From positions 140,101 through 204,100 of IMG/VR virus record IMGVR_UViG_3300013116_000108: a DNA stretch of 64,000 bases. One strand, 5' to 3'. Made by a program: the position numbers and the translations under genes. The notes beneath the pieces were generated by a model, which worked only from the letters and a program-made list of their open reading frames with translations, had not been told where the DNA came from and did no database searches. Shown piece by piece: positions 7,925 through 50,021 of the stretch (positions within the stretch are counted from its first letter, which is position 1; the number at the start of each line of letters is the position of its first letter).

Positions 7925-9598
7925 TTAAATTGAAATATCCTCTTCTGCTCCTGCTTCAGGTTCTGCTTCTGTGTCTCCACCTTCGCCACCCGCATCAGCA
8001 TCGCCTAGGTCATCACCACCTAAACTATCCAAATCGCCACTCAATCCGCCCGGAGTAATTCCGGCACTTCTAAGTGATTTACTTCCTATAGCAGATTCTG
8101 AGTCACCTTGTTCCTCACGCCATAGTCTGTCATTCTCTGCCATTTCTTCTTCAGTAAGACCTAAAAATCTTTCTAAAGCAAATCTTTTAGAGACATATTT
8201 TAAACCTTCCATCTGTGTAAAGTTGCTAATACGACTAGCATCAATATCACTTTGTCTATAACTAGCAAAGTTTTGAGGTTCATTAAACTCAATATCAAAT
8301 ATTGAATTATCAATGTTAACACCTCTCCAACGTAACCACAATTTAAATTCAGCGTCCATTGTACTTGCTACTAAACTTTGTAGTCGCATACAATACTGAT
8401 TAAATCTATGTTCTTGTATTAGTGCTACACCTACTTTGCCATCTGCTACTGTGTTAGTAGCGTCATCGCCTGATGTGGGCAAATATGTTGCTGGTATTCT
8501 TAAACCTCTGTACAGTTTATTAGTAAAGTATTTTAAGTCTGAAATTTCACCTAGGTTTTCACCACCTGGTAATGTTTCAACTTTAGAACCTCTACCTTCT
8601 GCTGTTTGAGGAAAGAAATAATCTTCATTTGTTGATAATGGATTGTAAGTAGCATCCATCATACTTTGTCCACCACCTGTTTGTGTTGGAATACGTCTTT
8701 GGTGTATTTCGTTTTTAACTCTTTCAACATAACCCATTGCCATGTGTGTTGGCATGTTACCTACGTCAATGTAAAATACTCTACGCTCAGGTGCTCTTTG
8801 AACCCTGTATATAATAATAGCGTCTTCTAATAATTCTTTTTGTTTGAATACTTTAAAAATATTTTCTAATACACTTGTGCCGAATGGCCAGTTATTATCT
8901 AACCCTTCAGTTAAACTTAAATGTACAACGTTTTCAGCATCTATAGAATTTTCAGTTACTTCAGTTTGTCTGCCTTGGTACTGTCCAGCCTGGTTATGTC
9001 CTGTTGTACTAGAACTAGGTGACATGTTTGCTGTTTCTGTGTGTGCTGGTGCTGTAATTGTTAAGTTTTCAAAATTAGGAGCAATATCTTTTAATACATA
9101 AACTTCAGGTGCTTTACCTTTTGCTTCGTTAACAACAACCTTCACTACGTTTTGTGGCTCAACCCAAAACCATTCAAATGTTTCTGGGTCTCTAATAAAT
9201 GTTTGATCTCCGTACTTGAGTACGTTACGAAACATTTTAAAAATTCTTTTATTAAAATCGTTTAAACTAGTCCAATTTTTAAGTTGTTCACTTAAAACTT
9301 TTACTTCTGTTTCTGTTGGATTTTCTTTAAATTTAAATGTAAATGGTGTTCCGTTTTCAGGAGACTTCATTGTACAAAATTCTGCTAGAATATCAATTGC
9401 TGTATTAACTTCTGAATCCATATCCATAGATTCATATTGATGATATCTTTCAATTCTATTCGGGTGTCCTACATATACTTCTGGTAATTGGCTTTGGTAA
9501 TTTTTAAAACCTAAATCGGCTTTAGAGTATCCACCAGCATTGCTAAGAGGACTTAGGGCGCCTGTGTCTACTGTTTTAAAATATTTTTTCCAACTCAT
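7925..9598 (-). CDS. g20: Portal vertex protein (gp20-like)
   Basis: Motifs LLEDAIIIYRVQRAPERRVFYIDVGNMP, EDYFFPQTAEGRGSKVETLPGGENLGEI and KLYRGLRIP. Confidence 0.97.
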   Translation of the reverse strand: MSWKKYFKTVDTGALSPLSNAGGYSKADLGFKNYQSQLPEVYVGHPNRIERYHQYESMDMDSEVNTAIDILAEFCTMKSPENGTPFTFKFKENPTETEVKVLSEQLKNWTSLNDFNKRIFKMFRNVLKYGDQTFIRDPETFEWFWVEPQNVVKVVVNEAKGKAPEVYVLKDIAPNFENLTITAPAHTETANMSPSSSTTGHNQAGQYQGRQTEVTENSIDAENVVHLSLTEGLDNNWPFGTSVLENIFKVFKQKELLEDAIIIYRVQRAPERRVFYIDVGNMPTHMAMGYVERVKNEIHQRRIPTQTGGGQSMMDATYNPLSTNEDYFFPQTAEGRGSKVETLPGGENLGEISDLKYFTNKLYRGLRIPATYLPTSGDDATNTVADGKVGVALIQEHRFNQYCMRLQSLVASTMDAEFKLWLRWRGVNIDNSIFDIEFNEPQNFASYRQSDIDASRISNFTQMEGLKYVSKRFALERFLGLTEEEMAENDRLWREEQGDSESAIGSKSLRSAGITPGGLSGDLDSLGGDDLGDADAGGEGGDTEAEPEAGAEEDISI

Positions 9599-9651: not shown

Positions 9652-12342
9652 TTAACCTTGCTGAGCAATATCCTGAATATGTCTATTACTTTTTCTATTA
9701 GATCCAAGTATAGCATTTAATTTAGAAACTGTTACATTGCCAATTTCTTTGTTATTTTCTAATTCATTTGTAGCAGTAGCAAGTAATTCACTTAAAAGTT
9801 TATTTGTTTTTTCAATACCTGCTGTAACTGACATAGATCCGCTTGTTGTTGCTAGTTCATCATTAGGTGTAATAGTTCCTCCAGTTGACGGTGTAAATAG
9901 TTCTGGCCCTCTTTCACCAACAATATAAGGATTGTCCATTCCTACAGAGCGAATGTTTCCGCCATACTGTTTAAATTGCTGTGGTTTAAACTGCCCATCA
10001 TAGGCATCAAAACTTGTATTAGCATTTAACCACGATACTATTTCGCCTGCTTTAATGTAACCTGGTGAATTTTCGCCATTCTTTCTATAAAAATCTATAG
10101 CCTCTTGTACATTACTTTGCTCTGCTTGGAATTGTCTCTTCCAATATGGCTTGTCTTTAGAACCTGCTTCTAAGTATTGAGCATATATCTCATCAAACAT
10201 CATTCCAAAGCCAGGGCCAAATCCGCCTAAGTTGTCATCACTGTCATGAGATGCTACTGTGGCACCTTTTGGTCCTTTAATTGACCATTGTTTTGCTTTT
10301 AGTTGGCCAAGATATGATTCAGCAGATTTAAGTAAGTCGCCATCTACTGATACATGTTTAGCCTCATTTACTAGAGCGGCAACTTCAGATGAAACTTGAG
10401 CGGCATCTTGTGTACCTAATTTTACGCCGCTACTTTTGGCTACTGCATCTGCTAGTTTAGATGGGTCAGCAATAAATTCAGCATTTTCTTCTGGAGATGA
10501 TTTGGCTATGATTGCCATAGCAGATTGTTTTTGGTTACCAGAGAATCCTGTACCTTCACCATCATTTTGTGCCGCGAGATCTGCCGCTACAACTAGGTTT
10601 TTCCTTCCTTCTGTCTCGTCGCCGTTTCCTATTTCTTCAAAAGCAATTTGATTCTTTAGTTGATTTGAAGCACCACCTAAAACATAATCTAGAGGATCAG
10701 CCGCAAAGTATTTTAATTCTTTAGATATTAACCCAAAGGATTTTGAGATATCTTCTCCTGCTTGTGTTACAGAATCAATCATGGTGTTGATTTTTTCTTG
10801 TATTGTTGGTTCTCCGTTTGCGCCGTCACCAAAGCCTTTGGCAAAATCCGCAACAGCGTCATTAATTGCTGATTTAAGTGAACCTGAAACTTCTGTTAAT
10901 GTAGCACCCATCATCAAGATCGCACCGCCGGCACCATCGGCTTTTTTGCTGTCGCTGGAACCAACTGCTTTGCCTAAATTATTAAATTGTGTTTGTAATT
11001 TTTGAACATCACTGGCCGCCTGTGTCATTACAGTAGCAACGTCACTAACACCATATAAGCCTTCAAACTCTTCACCACTTGCCGCAATACTTGGCAATAT
11101 GTCTCTTATACCTTCTTTGAATTCATCTTGGCTTATCTTTCCTGTTGCTACAGCGTCACCTAAGTCTCTTAATTTTTGTGCCGCATCGCTGTTACCAGCA
11201 ACAAAGTTTTTGATAGTCTGGTTACCAGCCGCCATCTCTAGTGCTAAATCTTTACCAGCAACACCCGCCATTAATACTTGAGATATTGCTGAATCTTGTC
11301 CTGCTGTACTAAAGACTAATTGTAAAGCCTTTTGAGCTTCAAGTGTAGCACCTTGTAATCTTATGTTAGCATCTGCTCTCAAATCATTTTGGGCCATTTC
11401 TTCTGCTAACTGTTGTCTACTTTTACCTGTTAGTCCTACTAGTGTGTTTAAGTCTGAAATGTATTCTTTATACAACTGAGTTTGTTGTCTGTACCCCATG
11501 TTTTGAAAATTAGTATTTCTTGATTGTGTTTGGGTATACTTTGCTAGTTGTTCTGCTTGTTCTTCATAAGACAGACCTAAAGCATATAATTCACCTCCTA
11601 CTGTATGATGAACTGTGTCTGCTAGTTCTACAAATCGTTTAGCACCTAGAGAAACACTACCACCAAAGGCCGCTAATCCTGAAGCATTTTGTTGGACAAT
11701 TTGTGTATAAGAATTCATTGTCAAACCCAACTGTTGTATTTGAGATGCTGTTCTAACAATGTCGCCGTTGTAGTTTGCTCCACTTTGACTTAATGCTATA
11801 AATCCATCATACATGTTTTGGGCATAGGCGGCAATCGCCATTGCGGCCGCTCCAGAGGCCGCTCCAAGTCCTGACAGAGCCGCTCCAACACCTGGTATCT
11901 TAGTTCCCATAACTTGGAAACTATCTGCTACTGCTCCTAACCCGTCACCTAGTGCTCCAGCACCTTGCTGTATAGCCCTACCTAACGTGTCAAAACTAGC
12001 AGGTCCTCTTATAAGATCATTAAGTACATTACCGGTATTTTTTACAATTTTACCTAAAGCACCAGCAACTGCTTTGCCTCGATCGGTCATTGTTTTATCG
12101 AGATCCTTCATCGTATCGTCGAAGTTACCCGACCAATCTTTCATACTAATGCTTAGATCTTTGTTTACTTTGGCTAGTTTTTTAATTTCGTCTTGTGTTT
12201 TTTTAGTTTCTGGATCAGATTTAGGCTTTGACCTTTGGCCATTCATTGTTTCAACAGCCTTTAATAGGTCTTTAAGAGTTTCTTCAGTTGCTACATCACT
12301 GACTATGATTTCGTTATCTTCTGTGTTAATTCTTATTGCCAT
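9652..12342 (-). CDS. Tail tape-measure-like protein (896 aa)
   Basis: Ala/Gly-rich and helical; C-terminal YIVGERGPELFTP motif typical of tape measures; divergent from the chaperone pair. Confidence 0.75.
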   Translation of the reverse strand: MAIRINTEDNEIIVSDVATEETLKDLLKAVETMNGQRSKPKSDPETKKTQDEIKKLAKVNKDLSISMKDWSGNFDDTMKDLDKTMTDRGKAVAGALGKIVKNTGNVLNDLIRGPASFDTLGRAIQQGAGALGDGLGAVADSFQVMGTKIPGVGAALSGLGAASGAAAMAIAAYAQNMYDGFIALSQSGANYNGDIVRTASQIQQLGLTMNSYTQIVQQNASGLAAFGGSVSLGAKRFVELADTVHHTVGGELYALGLSYEEQAEQLAKYTQTQSRNTNFQNMGYRQQTQLYKEYISDLNTLVGLTGKSRQQLAEEMAQNDLRADANIRLQGATLEAQKALQLVFSTAGQDSAISQVLMAGVAGKDLALEMAAGNQTIKNFVAGNSDAAQKLRDLGDAVATGKISQDEFKEGIRDILPSIAASGEEFEGLYGVSDVATVMTQAASDVQKLQTQFNNLGKAVGSSDSKKADGAGGAILMMGATLTEVSGSLKSAINDAVADFAKGFGDGANGEPTIQEKINTMIDSVTQAGEDISKSFGLISKELKYFAADPLDYVLGGASNQLKNQIAFEEIGNGDETEGRKNLVVAADLAAQNDGEGTGFSGNQKQSAMAIIAKSSPEENAEFIADPSKLADAVAKSSGVKLGTQDAAQVSSEVAALVNEAKHVSVDGDLLKSAESYLGQLKAKQWSIKGPKGATVASHDSDDNLGGFGPGFGMMFDEIYAQYLEAGSKDKPYWKRQFQAEQSNVQEAIDFYRKNGENSPGYIKAGEIVSWLNANTSFDAYDGQFKPQQFKQYGGNIRSVGMDNPYIVGERGPELFTPSTGGTITPNDELATTSGSMSVTAGIEKTNKLLSELLATATNELENNKEIGNVTVSKLNAILGSNRKSNRHIQDIAQQG

Positions 12343-12368
12343 ATTCTCATTTCACCATTATATACTCA

Positions 12369-12407
12369 TATAAATAGTTAGACTAACTACTATTATAATG
12401 TATTTAG
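12369..12407. promoter_or_regulatory. Face-to-face late promoters with a central palindrome
   Basis: TATAAATA (+, 12369-12376), CTAAATA (-, 12407-12401) and TAGTTAG-A-CTAACTA at 12375-12389. Confidence 0.55.
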
Positions 12408-12420
12408 CGGAGGAAAATCC

Positions 12421-13347
12421 ATGAGTGATAAAGAAACAAATCAAGACATGCCAAAAATGGCTACAGAGATTGAAACACCAGAAAAGGCAGTTAATCCTTT
12501 GCAGGCATATTTTCGCAGACCAGCAATTTATGTCCAACTGCCAAGTGGCGGTAAGTTCAACGAGCCGGGCGAACTTGAAATTCCCGTTAACGGAGAAATT
12601 CCAGTTTATCCGATGACAGCAAAAGATGAAATCTTAATGAGAACACCTGATGCTTTAATGAACGGTGCTACTACAGTTGAAGTTATCCAAAGTTGTTGTC
12701 CAAACATTAAAAATGCTTGGAAATTAAGTGCGTTAGATATTGACTTAATTCTTGTTAGTATTAGAATTGCGACATACGGCGAGTCTACTGAAATTAAAGG
12801 TGTTTGTCCAAAATGTAACGAAGAAAACAATTACGAGTTAGATTTAAGAACTATTACAGACAAAGTAACACAACGTGAGTATAAACCGTCAATTACAGTT
12901 AGCGATTTAAAAATACATTTTAAACCATTAACTTACGAAGCAGTTACTAAAGAAGCAATTAAAAACTTTGAACAGCAAAGAATGATTCAAGGCCTTGCTA
13001 CTGATGATACATTAGCAGAACAGGATCGAATTAATAGATTCCAAGATGCTTTTGTAAGATTAACTGTTTATTCGGTTGGGATACTAGCAGAAGCAGTAGG
13101 TCATATTGAAATGGCAGATGGTACTAAAATTTCTGATAGGCAACAAATTAGTGAATTTATAGCAAACTGTGATCGAACAATTTACAATACAATTAAGACA
13201 CACTTAGAAGAAAGTAAAACTAATTCAACTATAGAACCTATCCAATTTGAATGTGCCGGTACTACTGACACAGAAGGAAAACATACACCTTGCGGTGAGA
13301 AATGGCAACAACCATTTACTATTGATAATTCAACTTTTTTCGGATAA
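12421..13347 (+). CDS. Baseplate hub/tail assembly chaperone (gp26-like)
   Basis: Motifs VQLPSGGKF, PMTAKDEILM and DIDLILVSIRIATYG; CPKC and C..CG zinc motifs; ends ...STFFG. Confidence 0.75.
   Translation: MSDKETNQDMPKMATEIETPEKAVNPLQAYFRRPAIYVQLPSGGKFNEPGELEIPVNGEIPVYPMTAKDEILMRTPDALMNGATTVEVIQSCCPNIKNAWKLSALDIDLILVSIRIATYGESTEIKGVCPKCNEENNYELDLRTITDKVTQREYKPSITVSDLKIHFKPLTYEAVTKEAIKNFEQQRMIQGLATDDTLAEQDRINRFQDAFVRLTVYSVGILAEAVGHIEMADGTKISDRQQISEFIANCDRTIYNTIKTHLEESKTNSTIEPIQFECAGTTDTEGKHTPCGEKWQQPFTIDNSTFFG
13335..13341 (+). other. Putative -1 programmed ribosomal frameshift site (T TTT TTC)
   Basis: Canonical X XXY YYZ heptamer in the correct phase. The -1 frame is open from here into ORF 13353..13571 and is closed by TAA at 13326-13328 just upstream. 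Confidence 0.6.
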
Positions 13348-13352
13348 GGCTT

Positions 13353-13571
13353 TTGGCGTTAGATAATGAAAGCATTATCAAACTTCTCCAAGATTTTGAT
13401 AATGAGTCAAAAGCCCTACAAAAAGATTTATTGGAGACAACCTGGTATATGAGAGGAGGTATATCTTATAGCGAAGCCATGATGTTGTCACCAAATGAGC
13501 GTAAACAAATACACGATATAATTAAGCAAAATATTAAAAATACTGAAACTACTAAGTTACCTTTAATATAA
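13353..13571 (+). CDS. gp51-like chaperone segment; probably the C-terminal extension of a frameshift product
   Basis: WYMRGGISYSEAMMLSPNERK resembles tail-chaperone C-terminal segments; only a TTG start is available. Confidence 0.6.
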   Translation: MALDNESIIKLLQDFDNESKALQKDLLETTWYMRGGISYSEAMMLSPNERKQIHDIIKQNIKNTETTKLPLI

Positions 13572-13641
13572 ATTCACAATTTAAACATAGTTAAACCAAA
13601 TAACATATTTTAATATAAAGACTACCTGTTTAAATATTCTT

Positions 13642-13830
13642 ATGTACACTCACTATAATGTCATTAATGAACGTACACGCGACGTATACTGTACTGTCTT
13701 TTCTCCAGAAGAAGCACAGCAAGTAATAGACATGCAAAAAATTAATCACCCGCATGAAAGTTTTATAGTTAAAAAAATAAAAACTAGTTCTATAAAACCA
13801 GGCTTTGGGAGAGATCCAGATTTACATTAG
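13642..13830 (+). CDS. Small hypothetical protein (62 aa), probably leaderless
   Basis: TTAAATA-N5-ATG; plausible composition. Confidence 0.6.
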   Translation: MYTHYNVINERTRDVYCTVFSPEEAQQVIDMQKINHPHESFIVKKIKTSSIKPGFGRDPDLH

Positions 13831-14425: not shown

Positions 14426-14938
14426 CTAGGCACATAATGTTTTAACTAAATCTGAATTTCTTGTAAAAAATTCTTCAAAGTCTGATATGCGCCAGTTAGA
14501 GCCTGTAGTGTTTGACCAATAGTCGATGTAGTTTTTTGCTTTTGATTTGTGTCTAGATTCGATTGCGATAAATTTGCCTACTTGATTGAATTTCATTATT
14601 AATATATTGAAGTCGCCTGTTTCTGCTACATCCATTAGTTGTGATATCCACTCTTCTAACATTGGGATAGGTTCTGGTTGTAATAGTCTGTGAAATGGGA
14701 ATTGTTTATAAAACTTACATTCCGCATTAAGTTTAGGAAAACTTTGTCCGGGAACAATATCACCCTTAAAGGCTCTTACTTGCCCTTCATGAAGTATTTC
14801 CATTCTTGCTTTATTAGACCCGCCCACGTAAGCACCGGATCCTGGAGCTCTTATAAACGATTCACCGTATAGTCCGGACAAGAATTTTGCGACATCTCGT
14901 TCCCAACCTGATCCTTTTGCTTTTTGTGGGCTTGGCAT
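14426..14938 (-). CDS. Hjc-type PD-(D/E)XK Holliday junction resolvase
   Basis: Motifs KAKGSGWERDVAKFL, RAPGSGA, GDIVP and NAECKFY. Confidence 0.8.
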   Translation of the reverse strand: MPSPQKAKGSGWERDVAKFLSGLYGESFIRAPGSGAYVGGSNKARMEILHEGQVRAFKGDIVPGQSFPKLNAECKFYKQFPFHRLLQPEPIPMLEEWISQLMDVAETGDFNILIMKFNQVGKFIAIESRHKSKAKNYIDYWSNTTGSNWRISDFEEFFTRNSDLVKTLCA

Positions 14939-15216: not shown

Positions 15217-15780
15217 CTACGACAGCGATTTCTGAACTATTTCTTTAATCTCGTCCCACGAGTTGAAACAATCTAACTGAAATTGCCATCTACTATCAGG
15301 AGAATAATTAACGCCGTGGCGATGTCCACCAGCATTAATAAATGTTATTTTTGTATAATTGTGATCGTATAATAATTCGTCGTTTTCGTTATACCATTGA
15401 ATTCTCTGAGGAAATGATAATGGAATTATTAATCCAGCAGGCCTAAAATGGTCTTGATGTATATCAACTTGTGTAGCAGTTTCTTGAAAATTAGTTCTTA
15501 CTAGTTGGAATCCTGCCTGTCCACTACCGGGCATACTTTCATCTTTTTCAAAGTTAAATTTTAATCCAAATTTTTCAAAATACCTAACCCAATAATCTAC
15601 AATAGGTTCTTTTAAAATTGCTGGATTATAAACAACTTCTAACCCTAACGGTATACCGTGTTTACTATGATACATTTCAAATTCATTATCATACTTGTCG
15701 TACAAATACGAAAACTCATCTATGTTGTATCCTATAGGAGTTTCTATTACAAAATTATCTTTGGTTCGTTCAGTGTACAA
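15217..15780 (-). CDS. 2OG-Fe(II) oxygenase-like protein
   Basis: HxD (IHQD), a distal His (HRHGV) and an Arg (SRWQFQL) in a double-stranded beta-helix pattern. Confidence 0.6.
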   Translation of the reverse strand: MYTERTKDNFVIETPIGYNIDEFSYLYDKYDNEFEMYHSKHGIPLGLEVVYNPAILKEPIVDYWVRYFEKFGLKFNFEKDESMPGSGQAGFQLVRTNFQETATQVDIHQDHFRPAGLIIPLSFPQRIQWYNENDELLYDHNYTKITFINAGGHRHGVNYSPDSRWQFQLDCFNSWDEIKEIVQKSLS

Positions 15781-17603
15781 GTTAATGTCTGCCTTATTTT
15801 AAAGTTATCGCTGACTCTATCACTTCCTTCTAGAAGCATATGAGCAGTAGTTGATGTAGCGCCATTTAATGTTGGCGTAAATTCTATTGTTGTTTTTCTT
15901 CTTACATCATGTATAAAGTCATAGTTAAATGTTTTAGTAATTGGATATTCAACATCATAATCAAATAGTCTAGCATCGCAATACTTAATAAGTTCTGTTA
16001 AGATGTCTTTATCAATGCTGTATTGCTCGAGAAATGTTTTTGCTTCAGCATAAAACTCATCTCGTTTTTCTGTTAAGTTTTCTCTGTAGCCTAAACTTTG
16101 ACTTGCTAATCCAAATACATAATCGTCTATTCTTCCTTTTGCTTTATCAAAATGTTTTCTAATTAAACCGTTACTGTTAATAACATAATTGTACCAGTCG
16201 TTATAAAATTCTTTTTTAGATACAATATTTTCTCTATCTAAATAATCTGCGGCATCACGTAAAAAATTAAATTCGTGTCCTGTTCTTGTAGTCCATGTCC
16301 ATTCCCAGATATGTTTTAAGTCATCTTCCGATAGCCATTTTGTAGAAACTACAAGTTCAATATCTTCTTTTGTTTCTTCGTTTAGTACTCCAGGAAAAGG
16401 TTTACGAATAGTTTTAAATCCAAACTCTTCTCTACTTTTTCTGCTACCTAATTCAGCATTTGGTAATAATGCTAAAGGATATAGATATGTTGTTAATTCT
16501 TGATAATTTGTAATTTCTAAATATGTGTCTTTCCAACTATCTACTGTTTCTCCGGGATTACCTACAATAAGTTCACAGTCAAATGGCAAACCTAATTCAG
16601 CACAACGTTTAGCAAAATATTCATAATCGTTACTATCCATATTATCACGTTTTATAAGTTCTAATGCTAATGGTGTTAGTGTTTGTAAACTCATAATAAA
16701 ACTTTTAATAAGTCCGGCATCATACATTTTCTTTGCTATTTGTAAAATGTGTTCGTTGGCATTTTTTGCCCAGTTAACAAAGAATGTTTTAGGATAACCG
16801 TATTTCTTTTTTGTAGCGATAATCATATCAGCAATAGCATTATCTCTATCTTTTAAAATACCAAAGTTAGCATCAACACTATACAAGAATCCTATTTTAT
16901 TTTTACCCGCATATTCTATTTCTGCTTCTAATCTGTTAATGTCGTGATTAACTAGTTTACTATATGTAAGTCCTCCCCAATCACAAAATGAACAAGCATA
17001 AGGACATCCTCTGTTTGTTTCAAACAGCATAGCATGATGTGATTTTATCTTAGGCATTGAGCCTGACAAATAAGGACTTGGTAATTTACTTAAATCACGT
17101 TGTCTAGTTACTCTTTTATTATCTGCTACATTATTAGTCCAATGTGTTCCAAAGTTAACAGCAGTATTAGGTTGTGTGTCAATGTATTCTTTATTTGGAT
17201 TTAGTAATATGTTTTTAAATATTTCTTCTCCTTCTTGGAAAACAACAACGTCAACATACTTGTGACCGTTCCACCATTCATGTTTGCTGTCTTGCGGAAC
17301 TTGTGGACCACCGTAAATAATCATACACTCTGGCCAACGTTTTTTAATTTTTTCTGCTAGTTGGTTAGTAAAATTTTCATTCCAAATGTAAACACTAAAT
17401 CCAAATATAAAAGGATCTACTATTTCGTTTACTATTTCGTCAATGTCTTTCTTTTCATAATAAAGACCTGCTAATTGATAATTGTTTTTAACTTGTTCAT
17501 CTAATTCAGCATAAGTCCATAACCCGGCAACACTATACGGCAAGAATTTATGATTGCCAGGGTTAATAGTCATACTAAAGTTTGCTAGATAAACATTTTT
17601 CAT
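15747..17603 (-). CDS. Cobalamin-binding radical SAM enzyme (class B methyltransferase-like)
   Basis: N-terminal B12-binding pattern FGFSVYIWN...IYGGPQVP; radical SAM motif ETNRGCPYACSFCDWG; ELIVGNPGET. Confidence 0.9.
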   Translation of the reverse strand: MKNVYLANFSMTINPGNHKFLPYSVAGLWTYAELDEQVKNNYQLAGLYYEKKDIDEIVNEIVDPFIFGFSVYIWNENFTNQLAEKIKKRWPECMIIYGGPQVPQDSKHEWWNGHKYVDVVVFQEGEEIFKNILLNPNKEYIDTQPNTAVNFGTHWTNNVADNKRVTRQRDLSKLPSPYLSGSMPKIKSHHAMLFETNRGCPYACSFCDWGGLTYSKLVNHDINRLEAEIEYAGKNKIGFLYSVDANFGILKDRDNAIADMIIATKKKYGYPKTFFVNWAKNANEHILQIAKKMYDAGLIKSFIMSLQTLTPLALELIKRDNMDSNDYEYFAKRCAELGLPFDCELIVGNPGETVDSWKDTYLEITNYQELTTYLYPLALLPNAELGSRKSREEFGFKTIRKPFPGVLNEETKEDIELVVSTKWLSEDDLKHIWEWTWTTRTGHEFNFLRDAADYLDRENIVSKKEFYNDWYNYVINSNGLIRKHFDKAKGRIDDYVFGLASQSLGYRENLTEKRDEFYAEAKTFLEQYSIDKDILTELIKYCDARLFDYDVEYPITKTFNYDFIHDVRRKTTIEFTPTLNGATSTTAHMLLEGSDRVSDNFKIRQTLTCTLNEPKIIL

Positions 17604-22436: not shown

Positions 22437-22465
22437 ATTATTACACAAAGTAAATGCTTTGTCAA
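22437..22465 (-). promoter_or_regulatory. Sigma70-type promoter for the g47-g46-biosynthetic cluster operon
   Basis: TTGACA-17-(TG-T)AATAAT; the -35 element overlaps the g55 stop codon. Confidence 0.55.
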
Positions 22466-23385
22466 TCTTTTTCTTCTAAATCTTTCCCGTCATCTGTTTC
22501 CTCATAAGGCTTGCCGTGTTCTTGTTCCCATTCTTCAGCCGTCCATCTTCTCATTTCACTATTTGGATTTTTAAGTATCATCTTTCCTGATTTAATATCG
22601 TTCTCTGTTTGTCTTGTAAAACTTGGCATCAGCCCTGCTTCTTCTAAAATGTCATCTCGGATAATTTGATTTTTCTTTTCTAAATTTAATACTCTTGTAA
22701 AACTATTTGTAATTGCCGCTGTATAATAAGCAAACGGATTTTGTGATTTAGACTCGTCAAATTGTAAACCAATTTGTGCCAGTTGTAGCAATGCTGTACT
22801 TCGCATTTCGTCGTTGTAAGTATATCCTCTCCAATTTGATCTTGTAGCATATCTTTCACATAACTTTATAAACATTTTGGCTAAATTAGGATTAATGTTA
22901 CCGTGATCTTTATTAAAATATCCATTTTCTAGGCCGCCCTCCCAGTGACTCTTGCCAACCATTATTAATTCTCCACTAACTTCGTCAAATCTATAATGAA
23001 CAAATGGGGGGAAATTACACCTAACATGACGGTCTGCTAATGTTTTAGGATTCTTTTTTCTACCCGGCTCTTCTGGTATGTGATCAAATGTCATAACACG
23101 AAATACTACTTCATGTTTTTGGATTTTTTTCCAATCAATCGCAAATTCTGCCTGTTTTACTTTTTGTCCAGATTCAATTGCCTCTGTATAGGCAAGTTTT
23201 GCTAGTCGATCTGCCCGGTTTCGTTTTGCTTCGGCTGTGGTTCTTATATTAATTCTATCTACGCTTGGTAGAATAATATCATATTGTGAGTCAGTTTCGT
23301 CGTCTATATATGAACTGTAACTGTTCTTACTGTTGTGTATCTCCTTCAAAAGATCTCTATTATTTAAATATTTTTTTCTGGCCAT
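22462..23385 (-). CDS. g55: Late-transcription sigma factor (gp55-like)
   Basis: Motifs KKYLNNRDLLKEI and WRGYTYNDEM...FDESKSQNPFAYYTAAITNSF. Confidence 0.85.
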   Translation of the reverse strand: MARKKYLNNRDLLKEIHNSKNSYSSYIDDETDSQYDIILPSVDRINIRTTAEAKRNRADRLAKLAYTEAIESGQKVKQAEFAIDWKKIQKHEVVFRVMTFDHIPEEPGRKKNPKTLADRHVRCNFPPFVHYRFDEVSGELIMVGKSHWEGGLENGYFNKDHGNINPNLAKMFIKLCERYATRSNWRGYTYNDEMRSTALLQLAQIGLQFDESKSQNPFAYYTAAITNSFTRVLNLEKKNQIIRDDILEEAGLMPSFTRQTENDIKSGKMILKNPNSEMRRWTAEEWEQEHGKPYEETDDGKDLEEKD

Positions 23386-23424: not shown

Positions 23425-23432
23425 TATAAATA
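23425..23432 (+). promoter_or_regulatory. T4 late promoter TATAAATA for the baseplate operon
   Basis: Perfect consensus. A divergent TTGCTC-17-TATTAT sigma70-like promoter for g55 overlaps it. Confidence 0.75.
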
Positions 23433-27056: not shown

Positions 27057-28439
27057 ATGAAAAAAGTAATTAACCAAACAGATCCATTAAGAACAGGACA
27101 AGGATTTACACAAGCAACTCTGCCTGGTGGTCCATATATTGCTGAAGTTAAATCAGTAGGCGACCCTATGAAAAATAACAGAGTATCTGTGGCACTATTA
27201 GACACTAGTGACCACACTAGTAATGACGACCCTACACACTGGATTGATGTTGGAATTGCCTTACCTCATTATGGTATTACACCACATTCAACAAAAGGTA
27301 GTTCTCGTAGTGTTGAAGAATACGACGGTGGAAGTAGTTACGGTATAACAATTCCTGAACCTGATATTGGTACTAGGTGTTTAGTTGTTTTTGCTAATAG
27401 TGATAGAAGCAAAGGATTTATAATCGCATTTTTACCTAATACTTTTCAAAACACAACTACTGTAGGCAGAGGTGTTGCCAAACTCAAAGGAAAAATAGCA
27501 TTTAACGATGCGGACAAATCAGAATTTTACAGTTTAAGTACTATGTTTCCTGTGTTAGAGAAAAATTTAAAAACCTTAAAGTCAGTTTCAATTAGCGGAA
27601 TACAAAAATTGAAATGGAGTTTTGATAAACTTATGACTGATATTCTTATAACGCAAGGTTTATTATTAGACAGAGTAAGAGGAATCACATCATCTAGCAC
27701 AGAAAGGCAATCTCCTAATAGTGTTATTGGTATATCTTCAAAAGGTAGACAACTACCCGACCCAGCAGATAACATAGACATATTAAACAAATATATAACT
27801 GACCCAACTACTTTAACTCTTAGCGAAGTAGATACGTTATCAAGAAAGCCTGGACATAATTTAGTACTCGACGATGGCGGCATAGATGGTGAAAATAATT
27901 TAATTAGATTGCGTTCTAGTAAAGGTGCTCAAATACTATTACATGATACAAAAGATTTAATTTACATAGCAAATTCAAAAGGAACTTCATGGGTTGAAAT
28001 AACTTCAGCAGGTAAAATAGATATATTTGCTAGTGACTCAGTTAGCCTACATACAAAAGGTGACTATAATATTACAGCAGATAGAAATTTAAATTTAAAA
28101 GCCGCAAACATTAACTTAGAATCAACTGGTGCTACTGATATTGTAACAACAGGCATTACATCAATTGACTCTGGAGGAGTAATAGGATTAACATCAGGCG
28201 GAAACATATTACAAAAAGGTACACAAATACATCTCAATTCAGAAGATAATCAACCACCAGCACATACTGGACAATCTCCAGCAAGAGTACCAAATAAAGA
28301 ACCATGGGGACAACACGAAGATTATGATCCAGAATCGTTTACACTTGAAAAAACAGCAGTAGGTACAGAATCACAAGTAAGTGTTAAACTAAACACCGAT
28401 GGAACTATAACAACTGGTACTAGTACTACAGGAGAATAA
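27057..28439 (+). CDS. Central spike protein (gp5/VgrG-like OB fold plus beta-helix)
   Basis: YIAEVKSVGDP..RVSV, PDIGTRCLVVF and GHNLVLDDG...IRLRSSKGAQILLHD; no lysozyme domain. Confidence 0.8.
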   Translation: MKKVINQTDPLRTGQGFTQATLPGGPYIAEVKSVGDPMKNNRVSVALLDTSDHTSNDDPTHWIDVGIALPHYGITPHSTKGSSRSVEEYDGGSSYGITIPEPDIGTRCLVVFANSDRSKGFIIAFLPNTFQNTTTVGRGVAKLKGKIAFNDADKSEFYSLSTMFPVLEKNLKTLKSVSISGIQKLKWSFDKLMTDILITQGLLLDRVRGITSSSTERQSPNSVIGISSKGRQLPDPADNIDILNKYITDPTTLTLSEVDTLSRKPGHNLVLDDGGIDGENNLIRLRSSKGAQILLHDTKDLIYIANSKGTSWVEITSAGKIDIFASDSVSLHTKGDYNITADRNLNLKAANINLESTGATDIVTTGITSIDSGGVIGLTSGGNILQKGTQIHLNSEDNQPPAHTGQSPARVPNKEPWGQHEDYDPESFTLEKTAVGTESQVSVKLNTDGTITTGTSTTGE

Positions 28440-28441
28440 TT

Positions 28442-29563
28442 ATGGCGAAGGTAACTAGGGTAGGAGTTGACTCGCATCTTGGACACGCTTCACCTACTCC
28501 AAATCCATATCATGTAACACCGTATGCTACGGGTTCTAGTGACGTTATAACAAATGATCAAAATACTGTAAGAGTAGGAGACGTAACGGCTTGTGGCGAT
28601 CCTGCTGTTGGAAGTAGTTCATCAGTTTTTATAAACGGTCGCGGAGTACATAGGCAAGGAGACATTACAGGAGGACACGGCAGTTGGATACCTAATGCTT
28701 CTGCTAGTGGAAGTGATACTGTATTTGCCGGTGACTATGCTACTGAAGATTTAGGAGACGATACTATTGTATATCGTTTACCGCCTTTAGAAACACCCGA
28801 GCCTGTTGAGGGCGAACCAGATTCTATATACATGAAAAGTCATACACCTGGCGGCGGTGCTTTACCTCCTAGAGTAGATGGTGGTCCTGTTGTTGCGGCA
28901 GGTAATTCCGATCAAGCAACAGAAAATTTTGAACCAGGACCTCCAGGAGATTGTACAAGAAAAGACATTGGATCAGTTTCGTCTAAGTATGAATCAAATG
29001 GTAATGCTAGTGCTATAGGGCACGACTCAACAGGTGGATGGAGTTGGGGAGCATATCAAATTGCTACTAAAGTAGGAACATTTAAAAACTATATGAACTT
29101 TTTAAACAAACGATACAATGCCATTTATAATGAGTTAGAGAGTGTAGGCGGAAACTCAGCATTTACACAGGGTACAGATTCAGCAAAAGCAAAGTGGAAA
29201 GAACTTAAATCAAATCCAGACTTCTTACAAAGTCAACATGACTTTATCCAAGTAACACACTACGATAAACTTGTAGCAAAAATTAAATCACAAACAGGCT
29301 TAGATATCTGTGATGGCACACATTGTAATGGTTTACAAGATGCTATATGGAGTATATCTGTACAACACGGCCCAGGTTCTAGTATACCTAAAAAAGGAAT
29401 TACAGCCGCCGGCGAAGGTGCTACTGATGTACAATTAATTAATGCTATCTATGATGAACGTGATAACGTAAACAAATATTTTGCTTCTTCAACCGCGGCT
29501 GTTAAGTCGTCTGTTGCTAATAGATTTGCTCAAGAAAGAGCAGACTGCTTGTCTATTTGCTAG
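28442..29563 (+). CDS. PAAR (gp5.4-like) spike tip fused to a lysozyme-like domain
   Basis: N-terminal VTRVG.DSHLGH...VRVGD.TACGD...VFINGRGVHRQGD; Pro-rich linker; C-terminal SSKYES...DSTGGWSWGAYQI...WSISVQHG. Confidence 0.8.
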   Translation: MAKVTRVGVDSHLGHASPTPNPYHVTPYATGSSDVITNDQNTVRVGDVTACGDPAVGSSSSVFINGRGVHRQGDITGGHGSWIPNASASGSDTVFAGDYATEDLGDDTIVYRLPPLETPEPVEGEPDSIYMKSHTPGGGALPPRVDGGPVVAAGNSDQATENFEPGPPGDCTRKDIGSVSSKYESNGNASAIGHDSTGGWSWGAYQIATKVGTFKNYMNFLNKRYNAIYNELESVGGNSAFTQGTDSAKAKWKELKSNPDFLQSQHDFIQVTHYDKLVAKIKSQTGLDICDGTHCNGLQDAIWSISVQHGPGSSIPKKGITAAGEGATDVQLINAIYDERDNVNKYFASSTAAVKSSVANRFAQERADCLSIC

Positions 29564-32338: not shown

Positions 32339-32350
32339 ATAAATATTTAT
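32339..32350. promoter_or_regulatory. Palindromic bidirectional late promoter
   Basis: ATAAATATTTAT reads ATAAATA on both strands, between the divergent radical SAM and g25 genes. Confidence 0.55.
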
Positions 32351-32782
32351 ATGAGTACTTACAGAGGATTTTCAACTCTTGGTAGCGAGTTTGCTACTCC
32401 TACAGTAACCGACTTTTTGGCGGCAAAAACTGATCTACAAAACAGTTTAAATGTTCGCTTGGGAGAACGAATAATGCGTCCAGAATTTGGTTGTGTTATT
32501 TGGGATATGTTATATGAACCGTTTACTGATGAGTTAGTTGATGACTTAATTGAAAATATTACTGATATAGGAAAAAGCGACCCGAGACTTGAACTGCTAG
32601 ACATTAGACCCACACAATATGAACACGGTATACAAGTGTCAATGATACTAAGATATATTCCTACTGATCAAACAGAAGCCATGATATATTCATTTAATCA
32701 AGAGGCGGCAGAAGTAGTACAAGACACAGTAAATATAGACAACACAGACAATTTAAACACAGGAACAGCAAATGGCTACTAG
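32351..32782 (+). CDS. g25: Baseplate wedge protein (gp25-like)
   Basis: DLQNSLNVRLGERIMRPEFGCVIWDMLYEP...DPRLEL. Probable start MSTYRGFST at 32351. Confidence 0.9.
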   Translation: MSTYRGFSTLGSEFATPTVTDFLAAKTDLQNSLNVRLGERIMRPEFGCVIWDMLYEPFTDELVDDLIENITDIGKSDPRLELLDIRPTQYEHGIQVSMILRYIPTDQTEAMIYSFNQEAAEVVQDTVNIDNTDNLNTGTANGY

Positions 32783-35700: not shown

Positions 35701-36299
35701 CGTATTCAGACTTGTATAGAGAATGGATTTTAGATGTTACAGATAAAATTATAAAGCCAACAGAACCTACAGCAGAAAACTTGAGAGCGTCATTTAGCAC
35801 TATTGAAAATTCTAAAAGTATTTCAGATACAATAATATATCACTCAGCAAAATTTAAACCATTGTTTGGCGATAAAGCAGACACTAGTTTACAAGCAATC
35901 TTTAAAGTTGTAAAACTACCAGGCGCTGGCATTAGTGACTCTGAAGTTAAAGCATCTATTATTGATGCTATTAATGACTACTTTAATGTTTCAAATTGGG
36001 ACTTTGGTGATACTTTTTACTTCTCAGAATTAAGTGCTTTCTTACATAATACGTTAGCAAATAAAATAAGTTCTGTTGTTATTGTACCAAAAAGCACAAC
36101 ACAAGTATTTGGTAGTTTATTTCAAATCCGCAGTAATTACGATGAAATTTTAATCAGTGGAGCAACAGTTGACGATGTAGAAATAATTGATAGTATAACA
36201 GCAACTAAGATACAAGCAGGTGGTTCTATATCGAGTTTAGATACTACTACAAACACAACAGCAAGTGCTGTTACAACTAGCGGGAGCACCTCGTACTAA
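32772..36299 (+). CDS. g6: Baseplate wedge protein (gp6-like, extended, 1175 aa)
   Basis: DFETLRSTMISYLRKQFPEDFNDF.ESSE, ENFLETAERRDS and QNRMVNGEDY. Confidence 0.85.
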   Translation: MATSTRQTNLFVSEDWKKVYQTFKSADFESYDFETLRSTMISYLRKQFPEDFNDFVESSEYIALIDLIAFFGQSLAYRQDLNARENFLETAERRDSILRLASLLSYKPKRNTTSIGLLKIVSISTTEDVFDSNNNNLSGKTIFWDDSVNSDYEEQYNTIINAALSSAQRIGKPANEVTTGSIKTQEYELNLLANTQPLLPFTAVTNGADTKFELVNGTISGESYIYEKSPIPGSTYNFLYRSDGKGNASANTGFFTMFKQGTLGQIDFNLTSGLPNITYSIDKANINNTDVWLYELEDDGTVGDEWTQVPAISGSNVIYNSLSLSNRKLFAVESMVDDKIKLVFADGVFADIPKGTFRCYFRQSAGTTYSIKSTDINNVELNFNYISRTNQEENLSIGLTLQQNINTANRNETLTNVKKLAPQAYYTQNRMVNGEDYNIYPLTQFTSIIKSKAVNRAASGISRFLDVKDTTGKFSSTNIFSDDGVFYKEYTTKKDTFSFLNDNEIIDVIKNTLEPNLASKPMYHFYLDKFVSQAFANKVTWVKVSSTSNTTTGYFKDATGEAIQIGTGVSNVNKYLTLNSMIKFIPETGKHFMSNGSHMDGTDTDHIGATMQTWSSIKLIDTNGLGGLGNGLKSAGVGAVTLNELVPTGATVERVFPKWVSDIPTSLENTIKTNIKEYKDFGLRFDHITSTWSIITSDNLAVDKGYSDDNAGNTSGTKIDASWLVQFTTDGVQYTIKTRQLDYYFASKDETRFYFDKAIKIYDSVTGTTIKDRCTVLKVNNRPTSNKPLEEDYALDIIDMVTEVDGYKDNTKVKVTLGDADNDSVTDNPEMFEKIVGVDDPTGLAKNRKFVFFKQFYDYDNIERYQPIGQKVICYDYKTMREIHSNKGLFPEGKVFYATTENKFTTSFKDATGTLKLTPAANPGEQFGGNLGSEVQAYKVYIGRDNLKFQYKHNAPNNRRIDPSPSNLIDMYILTQSYSDLYREWILDVTDKIIKPTEPTAENLRASFSTIENSKSISDTIIYHSAKFKPLFGDKADTSLQAIFKVVKLPGAGISDSEVKASIIDAINDYFNVSNWDFGDTFYFSELSAFLHNTLANKISSVVIVPKSTTQVFGSLFQIRSNYDEILISGATVDDVEIIDSITATKIQAGGSISSLDTTTNTTASAVTTSGSTSY

Positions 36300-50013: not shown

Positions 50014-50021
50014 TATAAATA
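50014..50021 (+). promoter_or_regulatory. T4 late promoter TATAAATA
   Basis: Perfect consensus upstream of the fibre gene; a second ATAAATA at 50007-50013. Confidence 0.7.

What the first reader, a model, noticed from the sequence alone, without database searches (positions are those of the whole stretch)
12421..13571. Lambda G/GT-style -1 frameshift in a T4-like gp26/gp51 chaperone pair
The 308 aa ORF ends ACT TTT TTC GGA TAA, with a T TTT TTC slippery heptamer at 13335-13341. The -1 frame reads ...F-F-R-I-R-L-L-A-L-D-N... into the 72-codon downstream ORF, which has only a TTG start, predicting a 383 aa fusion. A 7 bp hairpin GATAATG-AAAG-CATTATC lies at 13362-13379. G/GT frameshifts next to tape-measure genes are established for lambda, Mu and P2, whereas T4 genes 26 and 51 are usually treated as separate genes.
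Basis: partly seen in the sequence, partly recalled or inferred. Interest (0 to 1): 0.6.

Follow-up and report, generated by a model that had tools for sequence, protein, structure and literature searches.

The report
Programmed frameshift in phage tail-chaperone gene
A marine T4-related phage very probably makes a short and a C-terminally extended form of its gp26-like tail/baseplate-hub assembly chaperone from one gene by a programmed -1 ribosomal slip; the signal is real and deeply conserved, but the principle was already published for T4-like phages in 2022.

Summary
ORF 12421-13347 (308 aa, Pfam PF12322, the T4 gp26/gp51 family) ends just after an in-phase T TTT TTC heptamer (13335-13341), and the -1 frame stays open for 76 codons, giving a 383 aa fusion.

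Comparative evidence for a programmed -1 shift:
- All 67 related IMG/VR loci with a complete 3' end (32-80% identity) and all 80 cyanophage-type loci keep the heptamer in phase.
- Codon-position constraint switches from the 0 frame to the -1 frame at the heptamer.
- 9 of 47 distinct loci have no start codon in the first 30 codons of the -1 ORF.
- A covarying stem starts 6 nt after the heptamer (13348-13357 with 13406-13415).

In cyanophage S-PM2 and vibriophage KVP40 the -1 ORF is the short gene annotated "gp51". It aligns with the C-terminus of T4 gp51 (hhalign 96.6%). T4 and some uncultured phages instead carry separate short and long paralogs and no slippery site in the long gene.

[quoted passage not shown] I therefore file this as a new member of a known kind. 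No protein-level proof exists here.

The parts
12369..12376 (+). TATAAATA, a T4-type late-promoter-like motif 52 nt upstream of the ATG
   Evidence: the motif occurs only 4 times in the window (12.1 expected). All four copies lie 27-52 nt upstream of gene starts. A gp55-like late sigma factor is encoded at 22462-23385. That it acts as a promoter is inferred.
12410..12414 (+). GGAGG Shine-Dalgarno sequence, 6 nt before the ATG at 12421
   Evidence: Read directly from the sequence.
12421..13347 (+). 0-frame ORF, 308 aa: gp26-like hub/tail assembly chaperone, short form
   Evidence: PF12322 E 6.6e-16 and phrog_150 E 7.1e-18. AlphaFold2 model with pLDDT 87. Best viral fold matches are T4-like 'baseplate hub assembly protein' entries, TM 0.8. 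More than 5000 homologs, nearly all 275-320 aa; the four read end in ..NFF/TFF plus one residue.
13335..13341 (+). Slippery heptamer T TTT TTC (X XXY YYZ in the 0 frame)
   Evidence: Invariant and in phase in 67/67 + 80/80 loci. The third base of the preceding codon is always T although that residue varies (N, S, T, R, H, A, D). The Phe codons are always TTT then TTC, although TTC is 23-32% of Phe codons elsewhere in these ORFs.
13342..13347 (+). 6-nt spacer GGATAA, which includes the 0-frame stop TAA at 13345-13347
   Evidence: Among relatives the 0-frame stop lies 1, 3 or 4 codons after the heptamer, while the heptamer itself is fixed.
13348..13357 (+). 5' arm (GGCTTTTGGC) of the candidate stimulatory stem
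   Evidence: The MFE fold pairs +7..+16 with +74..+65, 10 bp. On alignment A3, 78.1% of cells are paired against 69.9 +/- 0.9 in shuffles (0/500) and 26-54% with slid partners. There are 29 double-change cells against 9.9 +/- 2.6 (0/500).
13406..13415 (+). 3' arm (GTCAAAAGCC) of the candidate stimulatory stem
   Evidence: Same evidence as the 5' arm.
13341..13571 (+). -1 frame extension: 76 codons plus stop (the C of the heptamer is read twice). With residues 1-307 of ORF0 it gives the 383 aa long form
   Evidence: The extension is conserved across 47 distinct loci (mean column identity 62%; invariant F1 F2 R3 L6 W37 M39 R40 G41). A profile search found 526 hits, about 20 of the top 150 being 319-351 aa proteins that carry it in frame at their C-terminus.
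13362..13379 (+).
   Evidence: It begins 20 nt from the heptamer. In the MFE fold its 3' arm pairs instead with 13393-13403 inside the larger stem-loop.
9652..12342 (-). Divergent neighbour, 896 aa: candidate tape measure protein
   Evidence: Syntenic between portal and the gp26-like gene, as RaK2 ORF088 ('similar to tail tape measure') and PA5oct gp335 (a virion protein by mass spectrometry) are. Weak collinear BLAST match to PA5oct gp335. ESM-Atlas feature hits to tape-measure clusters score 0.94-0.95, a lead only. No Pfam, PHROG or PDB hit.

Best explanation
The gene at 12421 encodes the tail/baseplate-hub assembly chaperone of a T4-related marine myovirus, in the gp26/gp51 family. Most ribosomes terminate at TAA 13345-13347 and release the 308 aa short form. 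A fraction pause over the stem-loop that begins 6 nt downstream. Their two tRNA-Phe re-pair one base back on T TTT TTC, and translation continues in the -1 frame to 13571. This yields a 383 aa long form that carries a conserved, probably helical, 76-residue C-terminal domain. The two proteins share their first 307 residues and are made in a ratio fixed by slip efficiency, as with lambda gpG and gpGT. By analogy, both forms would bind the tape measure/hub complex, and the extra domain of the rarer long form would recruit another tail component. Neither form would stay in the virion. T4 achieves the same outcome with two paralogous genes: 26 (short) and 51 (long, needed only in small amounts). 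Shown here: the sequence signals, their conservation and covariation, family membership, the in-frame fusions, and the two-gene equivalents. Inferred: that the slip is ribosomal, its efficiency, and all binding partners.
For: (1) The heptamer is in phase in 67/67 relatives at 32-80% identity and in 80/80 cyanophage-type loci, with synonymous-site invariance at three positions. (2) Information per codon position is 0.70/1.20/0.39 in the 0 frame upstream of the heptamer and 0.74/1.13/0.35 in the -1 frame downstream. The first -1 codon CGN (Arg) is invariant in the window's clade, whereas the overlapping 0-frame codon GNN varies. (3) The -1 frame is closed within 3 codons upstream of the heptamer in 40 of 47 loci. 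In 9 of 47 loci there is no ATG/GTG/TTG in the first 30 codons, and the TTG at codon 6 is present in only 30 of 47. (4) A covarying stem lies 6 nt downstream. About two thirds of loci use the same register as the window, and most others have a different helix that also starts 4-7 nt after the heptamer. Cyanophage loci likewise have hairpins 4-10 nt downstream, with different sequences in different subclades. (5) Fusion evidence: 319-351 aa proteins carry the extension in frame (E 1e-22 to 1e-24). In the two contigs examined, such a long gene directly follows a short PF12322 paralog, and the long gene has no slippery site. (6) Copy number: T4 has two PF12322 genes and no slip site; Atu_ph07, RaK2, PA5oct, S-PM2, HTVC008M and KVP40 have one each, and that one carries the slip site. 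(7) The cyanophage extension aligns with the T4 gp51 C-terminus from the FF onward (hhalign 96.6%, E 5.7e-10). (8) In S-PM2 the next gene downstream has tape-measure-like domains. (9) Literature: cite Vladimirov et al. 2022 for this chaperone assignment.
Against: No protein or ribosome data exist for this phage. The RNA-library contigs that span the site (13282-13436 and 13237-13404) show T6 without an indel, but contigs cannot reveal minor species or prove transcription. Direct homology of this clade's 76-aa extension to the gp51 tail is weak (hhalign P 0.02 to 0.002); the link rests mainly on position and on the cyanophage bridge. The fold has no solved relative, so there is no homology to known chaperone structures. 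The tape measure identity of the neighbour is only a lead, and that gene is divergent rather than downstream. [quoted passage not shown] I could not read it. RM378 has a T7 run with the extension in the +1 frame, and Vi01 lacks a canonical heptamer.
Confidence: 0.82

Rival explanations
1. Transcriptional slippage: RNA polymerase adds one U in the T6 run, so a subset of mRNAs encodes the long form in one frame and the ribosome never shifts.
For: The site is a homopolymer run. HTVC008M has T8. RM378 has T7 with the extension in the +1 frame, which a one-base deletion in the RNA would reach but a -1 ribosomal slip would not. The title of Vladimirov et al. [quoted passage not shown]
Against: The run is exactly six T followed by C in 147 of 147 loci and always in X XXY YYZ phase. 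Slippage by the polymerase would need neither phase nor the C, and from general knowledge it favours longer runs. A conserved, covarying stem 4-10 nt downstream is the hallmark of ribosomal -1 shifting. RNA-library contigs show T6 only, which is weak evidence. The RM378 record may contain a homopolymer error.
Confidence: 0.1
2. Two separate proteins: the downstream ORF is translated on its own from the TTG at 13353 (or by termination-reinitiation), as current annotations of 'gp51' in cyanophages and KVP40 assume.
For: A TTG lies at 13353 with AAGG 3 nt upstream. S-PM2 and KVP40 records annotate 57- and 55-aa 'gp51' genes. Gene callers report many 58-98 aa ORFs.
Against: The TTG is absent in 17 of 47 loci, and 9 loci have no start codon for 30 codons. 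Residues FFRxRLL upstream of any start are conserved in the -1 frame. Many cyanophage loci have no Met before residue 22. Natural in-frame fusions and T4 gp51 show the domain as a C-terminal part of a gp26-like protein. The AAGG-to-TTG spacing of 3 nt is too short for a normal ribosome-binding site (general knowledge).
Confidence: 0.05
3. Artefact or decay: an assembly indel in a T run, or a pseudogene, with the downstream frame open by chance.
For: Homopolymer runs are error-prone. One database protein (P0025) is an obvious assembly duplication.
Against: The same arrangement occurs in 147 independent metagenomic loci and in finished isolate genomes. The window's sequence is held by DNA runs from several studies and by an RNA-library contig with zero differences. 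The -1 ORF is under protein-level constraint.
Confidence: 0.01

Closest known systems
T4 gp26 and gp51, identified as the tail assembly chaperones of T4-like phages (Vladimirov, Gautam and Davidson, Virology 2022, 566:9; PMID 34826709; known to me only through citing papers)
   Same: Same protein family: PF12322 and phrog_150 hit T4 gp26, T4 gp51 and the window ORF. There is a short form and a long form that differ by a C-terminal tail. gp26 ends ..EFFELL at the position of the slip site, and gp51 continues for about 50 residues.
   Different: T4 uses two divergently transcribed genes and has no slippery heptamer. The window has one gene with a -1 overlap. The window's extension is longer (76 aa against about 50) and only weakly similar in sequence.
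Cyanomyovirus and KVP40 'gp26' plus short 'gp51' (S-PM2p207/p208; KVP40.0328/0327)
   Same: Identical architecture: a single PF12322 gene ending ..SFF/DFF plus one residue, an in-phase T TTT TTC, and a -1 ORF of 55-68 aa. A hairpin follows the heptamer.
   Different: In those phages the pair is directly followed on the same strand by a large gene (tape-measure-like in S-PM2), whereas here the candidate is divergent. The records annotate the ORFs as two genes. Sullivan et al. 2010 (PMC3037559) noted the puzzlingly short gp51 without mentioning a frameshift.
Lambda gpG/gpGT (also P2 E/E+E' and the Mu equivalents): the conserved tail assembly chaperone frameshift (Levin 1993 and Xu 2004, as summarised in PMC5009743)
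   Same: A -1 slip near the 3' end of a chaperone ORF yields a minor C-terminally extended product. Gene position is next to a tape measure gene. In lambda neither product is in the virion; T4 gp51 likewise is absent from the particle.
   Different: There is no detectable sequence or fold relationship: no PDB match by sequence, Foldseek or VIA-align. The protein is much larger (308 aa against about 140 for gpG, from memory) and has Cys-pair (zinc-ribbon-like) motifs. The lambda site is G GGA AAG (from memory) and this one is T TTT TTC with a 68-nt stem-loop.
Jumbo myoviruses RaK2, PA5oct, Atu_ph07 and CBB: 'baseplate hub subunit'
   Same: These are the closest cultured relatives (26-33% identity). 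They share the portal / large structural protein / divergent gp26-like gene synteny, the same heptamer and 73-78 codon -1 ORFs.
   Different: Their GenBank records leave the -1 region unannotated or call a small hypothetical ORF. No frameshift is annotated.

Membership tests
PF12322 / phrog_150 (T4 gp26-gp51 baseplate hub assembly proteins) | Significant match to the family profile over most of its length | tested here: met
   PF12322 59.1 bits against a cut-off of 24.5, covering profile positions 9-200 of 219. phrog_150 E 7.1e-18.
PF12322 / phrog_150 (T4 gp26-gp51 baseplate hub assembly proteins) | Shared fold with annotated T4-like hub assembly proteins | tested here: met
   The model (pLDDT 87) matches BFVD 'Baseplate hub assembly protein, bacteriophage T4-like' at E 2e-24, TM 0.81-0.87. 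There are 64 viral matches at E <= 1e-3.
Canonical -1 programmed ribosomal frameshift cassette | X XXY YYZ heptamer in the 0-frame phase, conserved among relatives | tested here: met
   T TTT TTC at 13335-13341. It is in phase in 147 of 147 loci, with synonymous-site invariance.
Canonical -1 programmed ribosomal frameshift cassette | Stimulatory RNA structure 5-9 nt downstream, supported by covariation | tested here: met
   A 10-bp stem follows a 6-nt spacer. 78% of cells are paired against 70% in shuffles (0/500), and there are 29 against 9.9 double-change cells (0/500). Slid controls give 26-54%. The caveat is that both arms are coding, so some conservation is at the protein level.
Canonical -1 programmed ribosomal frameshift cassette | A trans-frame protein is actually produced | not testable with these tools
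   Only RNA-library contigs are available. No proteomics data are available.
Tail assembly chaperone (functional class, lambda G/GT type) | Two products sharing an N-terminal part, the longer made by recoding or by a second fused gene | tested here: met
   Comparative evidence plus two-gene equivalents in T4 and in loci L173 and L174. This rests on sequence only.
Tail assembly chaperone (functional class, lambda G/GT type) | Gene lies immediately upstream of the tape measure gene | tested here: inconclusive
   In the window the candidate (896 aa) is adjacent but divergent, and its identity rests on synteny and ESM-Atlas leads. In S-PM2 the downstream gene has tape-measure-like PHROG hits.
Tail assembly chaperone (functional class, lambda G/GT type) | Binds the tape measure protein and tail tube protein; absent from the virion | not tested
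   No tube gene (PF06841) was found in the 56%-complete record, and no complex prediction was run. As weak indirect evidence, the PA5oct record marks both large neighbours as found by ESI-MS/MS but not the gp26-like protein.
Lambda gpG-like chaperone fold (homology) | Sequence or structural similarity to solved tail assembly chaperones | tested here: not met
   No PDB hit by phmmer or Foldseek (best E 0.19). VIA-align found only generic helical-hairpin matches, Z <= 8.5 over residues 166-238. The protein works like G/GT but is not shown to be a homolog.

The most novel reading that the evidence does not exclude
Two readings remain open. First, the T4-superfamily chaperone gene carries a full canonical ribosomal -1 frameshift cassette: heptamer, a 4-10 nt spacer, and a stem-loop that is remade with different sequences in different clades. 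[quoted passage not shown] Second, the one-gene-plus-frameshift state has been converted into a short-gene-plus-long-gene pair more than once: divergent genes 26/51 in T4 and tandem pairs in uncultured phages. That would make it a natural experiment on why a fixed ratio of two isoforms is needed. It would also explain the 'truncated gp51' of cyanophages and vibriophages, and an unannotated gap in every RaK2-, PA5oct- and Atu_ph07-like jumbo phage genome.
Probability: 0.45. Interest if true: 0.5.

Novelty: new member of a known kind. Interest (0 to 1): 0.35.

Why it matters
Genome annotation: the gp26-like gene of this large marine phage clade (more than 5000 database homologs) and of the cultured jumbo phages checked (RaK2, PA5oct, Atu_ph07) is annotated without its long form. 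Cyanophage and KVP40 'gp51' is annotated as a free 55-57 aa protein. These should be joined trans-frame products.

Biology: the finding ties the poorly understood T4 hub assembly factors gp26 and gp51 to the general short/long chaperone logic of long-tailed phages. It also offers many natural variants (one gene against two genes, different stem-loops) for testing how the isoform ratio controls tail or hub assembly.

Because the chaperone assignment was published in 2022, the value here is confirmation, extension to a new clade, and the RNA-structure evidence on mechanism.

Tried and rejected
1. DNA-level search of GenBank phages with 12300-13700 found no match. Only protein-level relatives exist.
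2. The extension alone has no Pfam or PHROG family at E <= 0.1. tblastn of the extension found only Atu_ph07, Phosso and Xoo-sp13.
3. The direct profile comparison of this clade's extension with T4-type gp51 stayed weak (P 0.023; P 0.0017 with a deeper profile). I therefore do not claim proven homology for this clade, only for the cyanophage extension.
4. hhalign of whole fusion models against gp51 aligned only 73 columns of the N-domain (52%), so it was not informative about the junction.
5. P0025 (383 aa) looked like an in-frame fusion but is an assembly duplication.
6. Fold searches against solved structures found nothing specific.
7. RNA evidence consisted of Logan contigs only. They span the site with T6 but cannot show minor U7 species, transcript ends or even transcription.
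8. No tail tube gene was found in the held record. I had planned to test the extension against the tube protein and did not run it; complex prediction was not used.
The natural long form (T4-type gp51, P0121) was folded instead.
11. The paper by Vladimirov et al. is not held, so its exact claims are unverified.

Full report
**Observation.**
The window is AT-rich phage DNA. ORF 12421-13347 (+, 308 aa) ends ACT TTT TTC GGA TAA, with T TTT TTC at 13335-13341 in X XXY YYZ phase. After a -1 slip the frame reads R-I-R-L-L-A-L-D-N-E and stays open to the stop at 13569-13571. That gives a 383 aa product (307 + 76). The 7-bp hairpin at 13362-13379 is present. The heptamer alone means little, since TTTTTTC occurs 36 times against about 30 expected.

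**What the gene is.**
The 308 aa protein belongs to PF12322 (T4_baseplate, E 6.6e-16) and phrog_150. Its neighbours show a T4-core myovirus:
- gp20-type portal at 7925-9598;
- gp23-type major head protein;
- gp46/47-type nuclease;
- gp55-type late sigma factor;
- gp5-like hub protein and a PAAR protein.

The window lies in a 204 kb viral record judged 56% complete, and the sequence is found in marine metagenomes from several studies. A TATAAATA motif at 12369-12376 and a GGAGG at 12410-12414 precede the ATG. The motif is depleted in the window (4 against 12 expected), and all four copies sit 27-52 nt upstream of gene starts. This suggests late expression.

**Conservation of the frameshift signal.**
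Sixty-nine IMG/VR loci encode relatives. In all 67 with a complete 3' end (32-80% identity):
- the ORF ends with an in-phase T TTT TTC;
- the -1 frame is open for 71-75 codons past the 0-frame stop;
- the +1 frame closes within 1-15 codons.

The 0-frame stop sits 1, 3 or 4 codons after the heptamer, while the heptamer never moves. The third base of the preceding codon is always T although the residue varies. The two Phe codons are always TTT then TTC, although TTC makes up 23% of Phe codons elsewhere in these ORFs.

Anchored on the heptamer, information per codon position is 0.70/1.20/0.39 in the 0 frame upstream and 0.74/1.13/0.35 in the -1 frame downstream. Coding constraint therefore changes frame at the heptamer. 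The extension is a conserved domain (FFRxRLL...WYMRGG...ER...).

**Independent initiation is not conserved.**
- The TTG at codon 6 is present in only 30 of 47 distinct loci.
- Nine loci have no ATG/GTG/TTG in the first 30 codons.
- The -1 frame is closed within three codons upstream of the heptamer in 40 of 47 loci.

**RNA structure.**
Folding 100 nt after the heptamer gives, for the window, a 10-bp stem between 13348-13357 and 13406-13415 after a 6-nt spacer.
- About two thirds of the 47 loci fold in the same register.
- Most of the rest have a different helix that also begins 4-7 nt after the heptamer.
- On alignment A3, 78.1% of cells pair against 69.9 +/- 0.9 in shuffles (0/500) and 26-54% with slid partners.
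- There are 29 compensatory cells against 9.9 +/- 2.6 (0/500).
- Cyanophage relatives also carry hairpins 4-10 nt downstream, with unrelated sequences in different subclades.

This pattern fits ribosomal -1 frameshifting better than polymerase slippage.

**Relation to T4 genes 26 and 51.**
In T4 these genes are divergent neighbours: 26 then 25 on one strand, and 51-27-28-29 on the other.
- Both gp26 and gp51 match PF12322 (8.8e-64 and 3.9e-52) and phrog_150. gp51 extends about 45 profile positions further.
- gp26 ends ..EFFELL with no slippery site.
- The gp51 model (pLDDT 92) continues from that helix into three more helices.
- The window ORF0 model (pLDDT 87) stops inside the corresponding helix.

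Complete genomes with a single PF12322 gene are Atu_ph07, RaK2, PA5oct, S-PM2, HTVC008M, KVP40, Vi01 and RM378. T4 has two. The single gene carries the heptamer and a -1 ORF in six of these eight.

In S-PM2 and KVP40 the -1 ORF is the annotated 57- or 55-aa 'gp51', and a large gene follows it. In S-PM2 that gene has tape-measure-like domains. Sullivan et al. 2010 noted that cyanophage and vibriophage gp51 lacks the first ~200 residues, without giving an explanation.

All 80 cyanophage-type loci keep the in-phase heptamer. Their extension aligns with T4-type gp51 residues 199-259, starting at the FF (hhalign 96.6%, E 5.7e-10). For the window's clade the same comparison is only suggestive (P 0.02 to 0.002).

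**Natural fusions.**
A profile of the extension, searched against 1.84 billion representative proteins, found 526 hits. About 20 of the top 150 are 319-351 aa proteins with the domain in frame at the C-terminus. In the two contigs examined, the long gene directly follows a short PF12322 paralog (294 and 300 aa), and the long gene has no slippery heptamer. One gene with a frameshift and two genes without one are therefore interchangeable solutions. This argues that both a short and a long form are needed.

**Function.**
Leiman et al. 2010 list gp26 and gp51 as hub assembly chaperones and state that gp51 is absent from the particle. PRFect and a 2025 phage paper cite Vladimirov, Gautam and Davidson 2022 on two points. 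[quoted passage not shown] The other is poly-T slippery sequences in the N-terminal chaperone gene. I could not read that paper.

The fold has no solved relative, so the resemblance to lambda G/GT is one of logic and not of shown homology. The 896-aa divergent neighbour is a candidate tape measure protein by synteny and weak leads only.

**Rivals.**
- Transcriptional slippage is favoured by the homopolymer, by RM378's T7/+1 layout and by the 2022 title. It is disfavoured by the strict T6C run, the strict phase and the downstream stems.
- Independent initiation is disfavoured by the missing start codons and by the natural fusions.
- Artefact is excluded by the conservation.

RNA-library contigs span the site with T6, but they cannot settle the mechanism.

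**Verdict.**
The concept is already in the literature. This locus is a new member in an uncultured marine clade. My added evidence is a canonical ribosomal cassette and recurrent one-gene/two-gene interconversion.

Noticed in passing
window 36299-49327 (+): A single 4342-aa ORF, with only an FG-GAP repeat (residues 2778-2823) and a CBM_5_12 carbohydrate-binding hit detected. It may be a giant fibre or host-adhesion protein. It is preceded by an 1175-aa ORF with no family hit.
   Followed up: partly
window 12369-12376, 23425-23432, 50014-50021 (+) and 32344-32351 (-): TATAAATA is depleted (4 copies against 12 expected), yet every copy lies 27-52 nt upstream of a gene start. Together with the gp55-like sigma factor at 22462-23385, this looks like a T4-type late promoter set.
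   Followed up: partly
window 15747-17603 (-): A 618-aa protein with B12-binding and radical SAM domains, followed by a PDDEXK/RusA-like nuclease at 14426-14938. This is an unusual auxiliary gene for a phage structural region.
   Followed up: no
L090 (Rhodothermus phage RM378, NC_004735, near 26459): The single gp26-like gene has a T7 run, and the gp51-like extension lies in the +1 frame rather than the -1 frame. Possible explanations are a homopolymer error in an old record (T6 would give an in-frame long form), a +1 shift, or RNA slippage.
   Followed up: no
L088 (Salmonella phage Vi01, NC_015296, near 47522): The gp26-like ORF ends GAA ATT TTC ATT TAA with no canonical heptamer, yet the -1 frame encodes a gp51-like tail (..SESMPW..). 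The -1 frame opens only 10 nt before the stop, and GTG ATG codons occur 15 codons in. The mechanism is unclear.
   Followed up: no
L173 411-1295: In a two-gene phage the short paralog still ends AAT TTT TTC ACT.. with the in-phase heptamer, but the -1 frame hits a stop two codons later. This may be a relic of the one-gene state.
   Followed up: no
L070, L071, L072 (Atu_ph07, RaK2, PA5oct GenBank records): A 200-365 nt stretch after the 'baseplate hub' gene is unannotated, or carries only a 40-aa hypothetical ORF. It holds the 73-78 codon -1 extension, so these records lack the long form.
   Followed up: yes
window 27057-29563 (+): A gp5-like hub/lysozyme homolog (460 aa) is followed by a 373-aa protein with an N-terminal PAAR motif. 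These are the likely tail-tip spike components of this phage.
   Followed up: no
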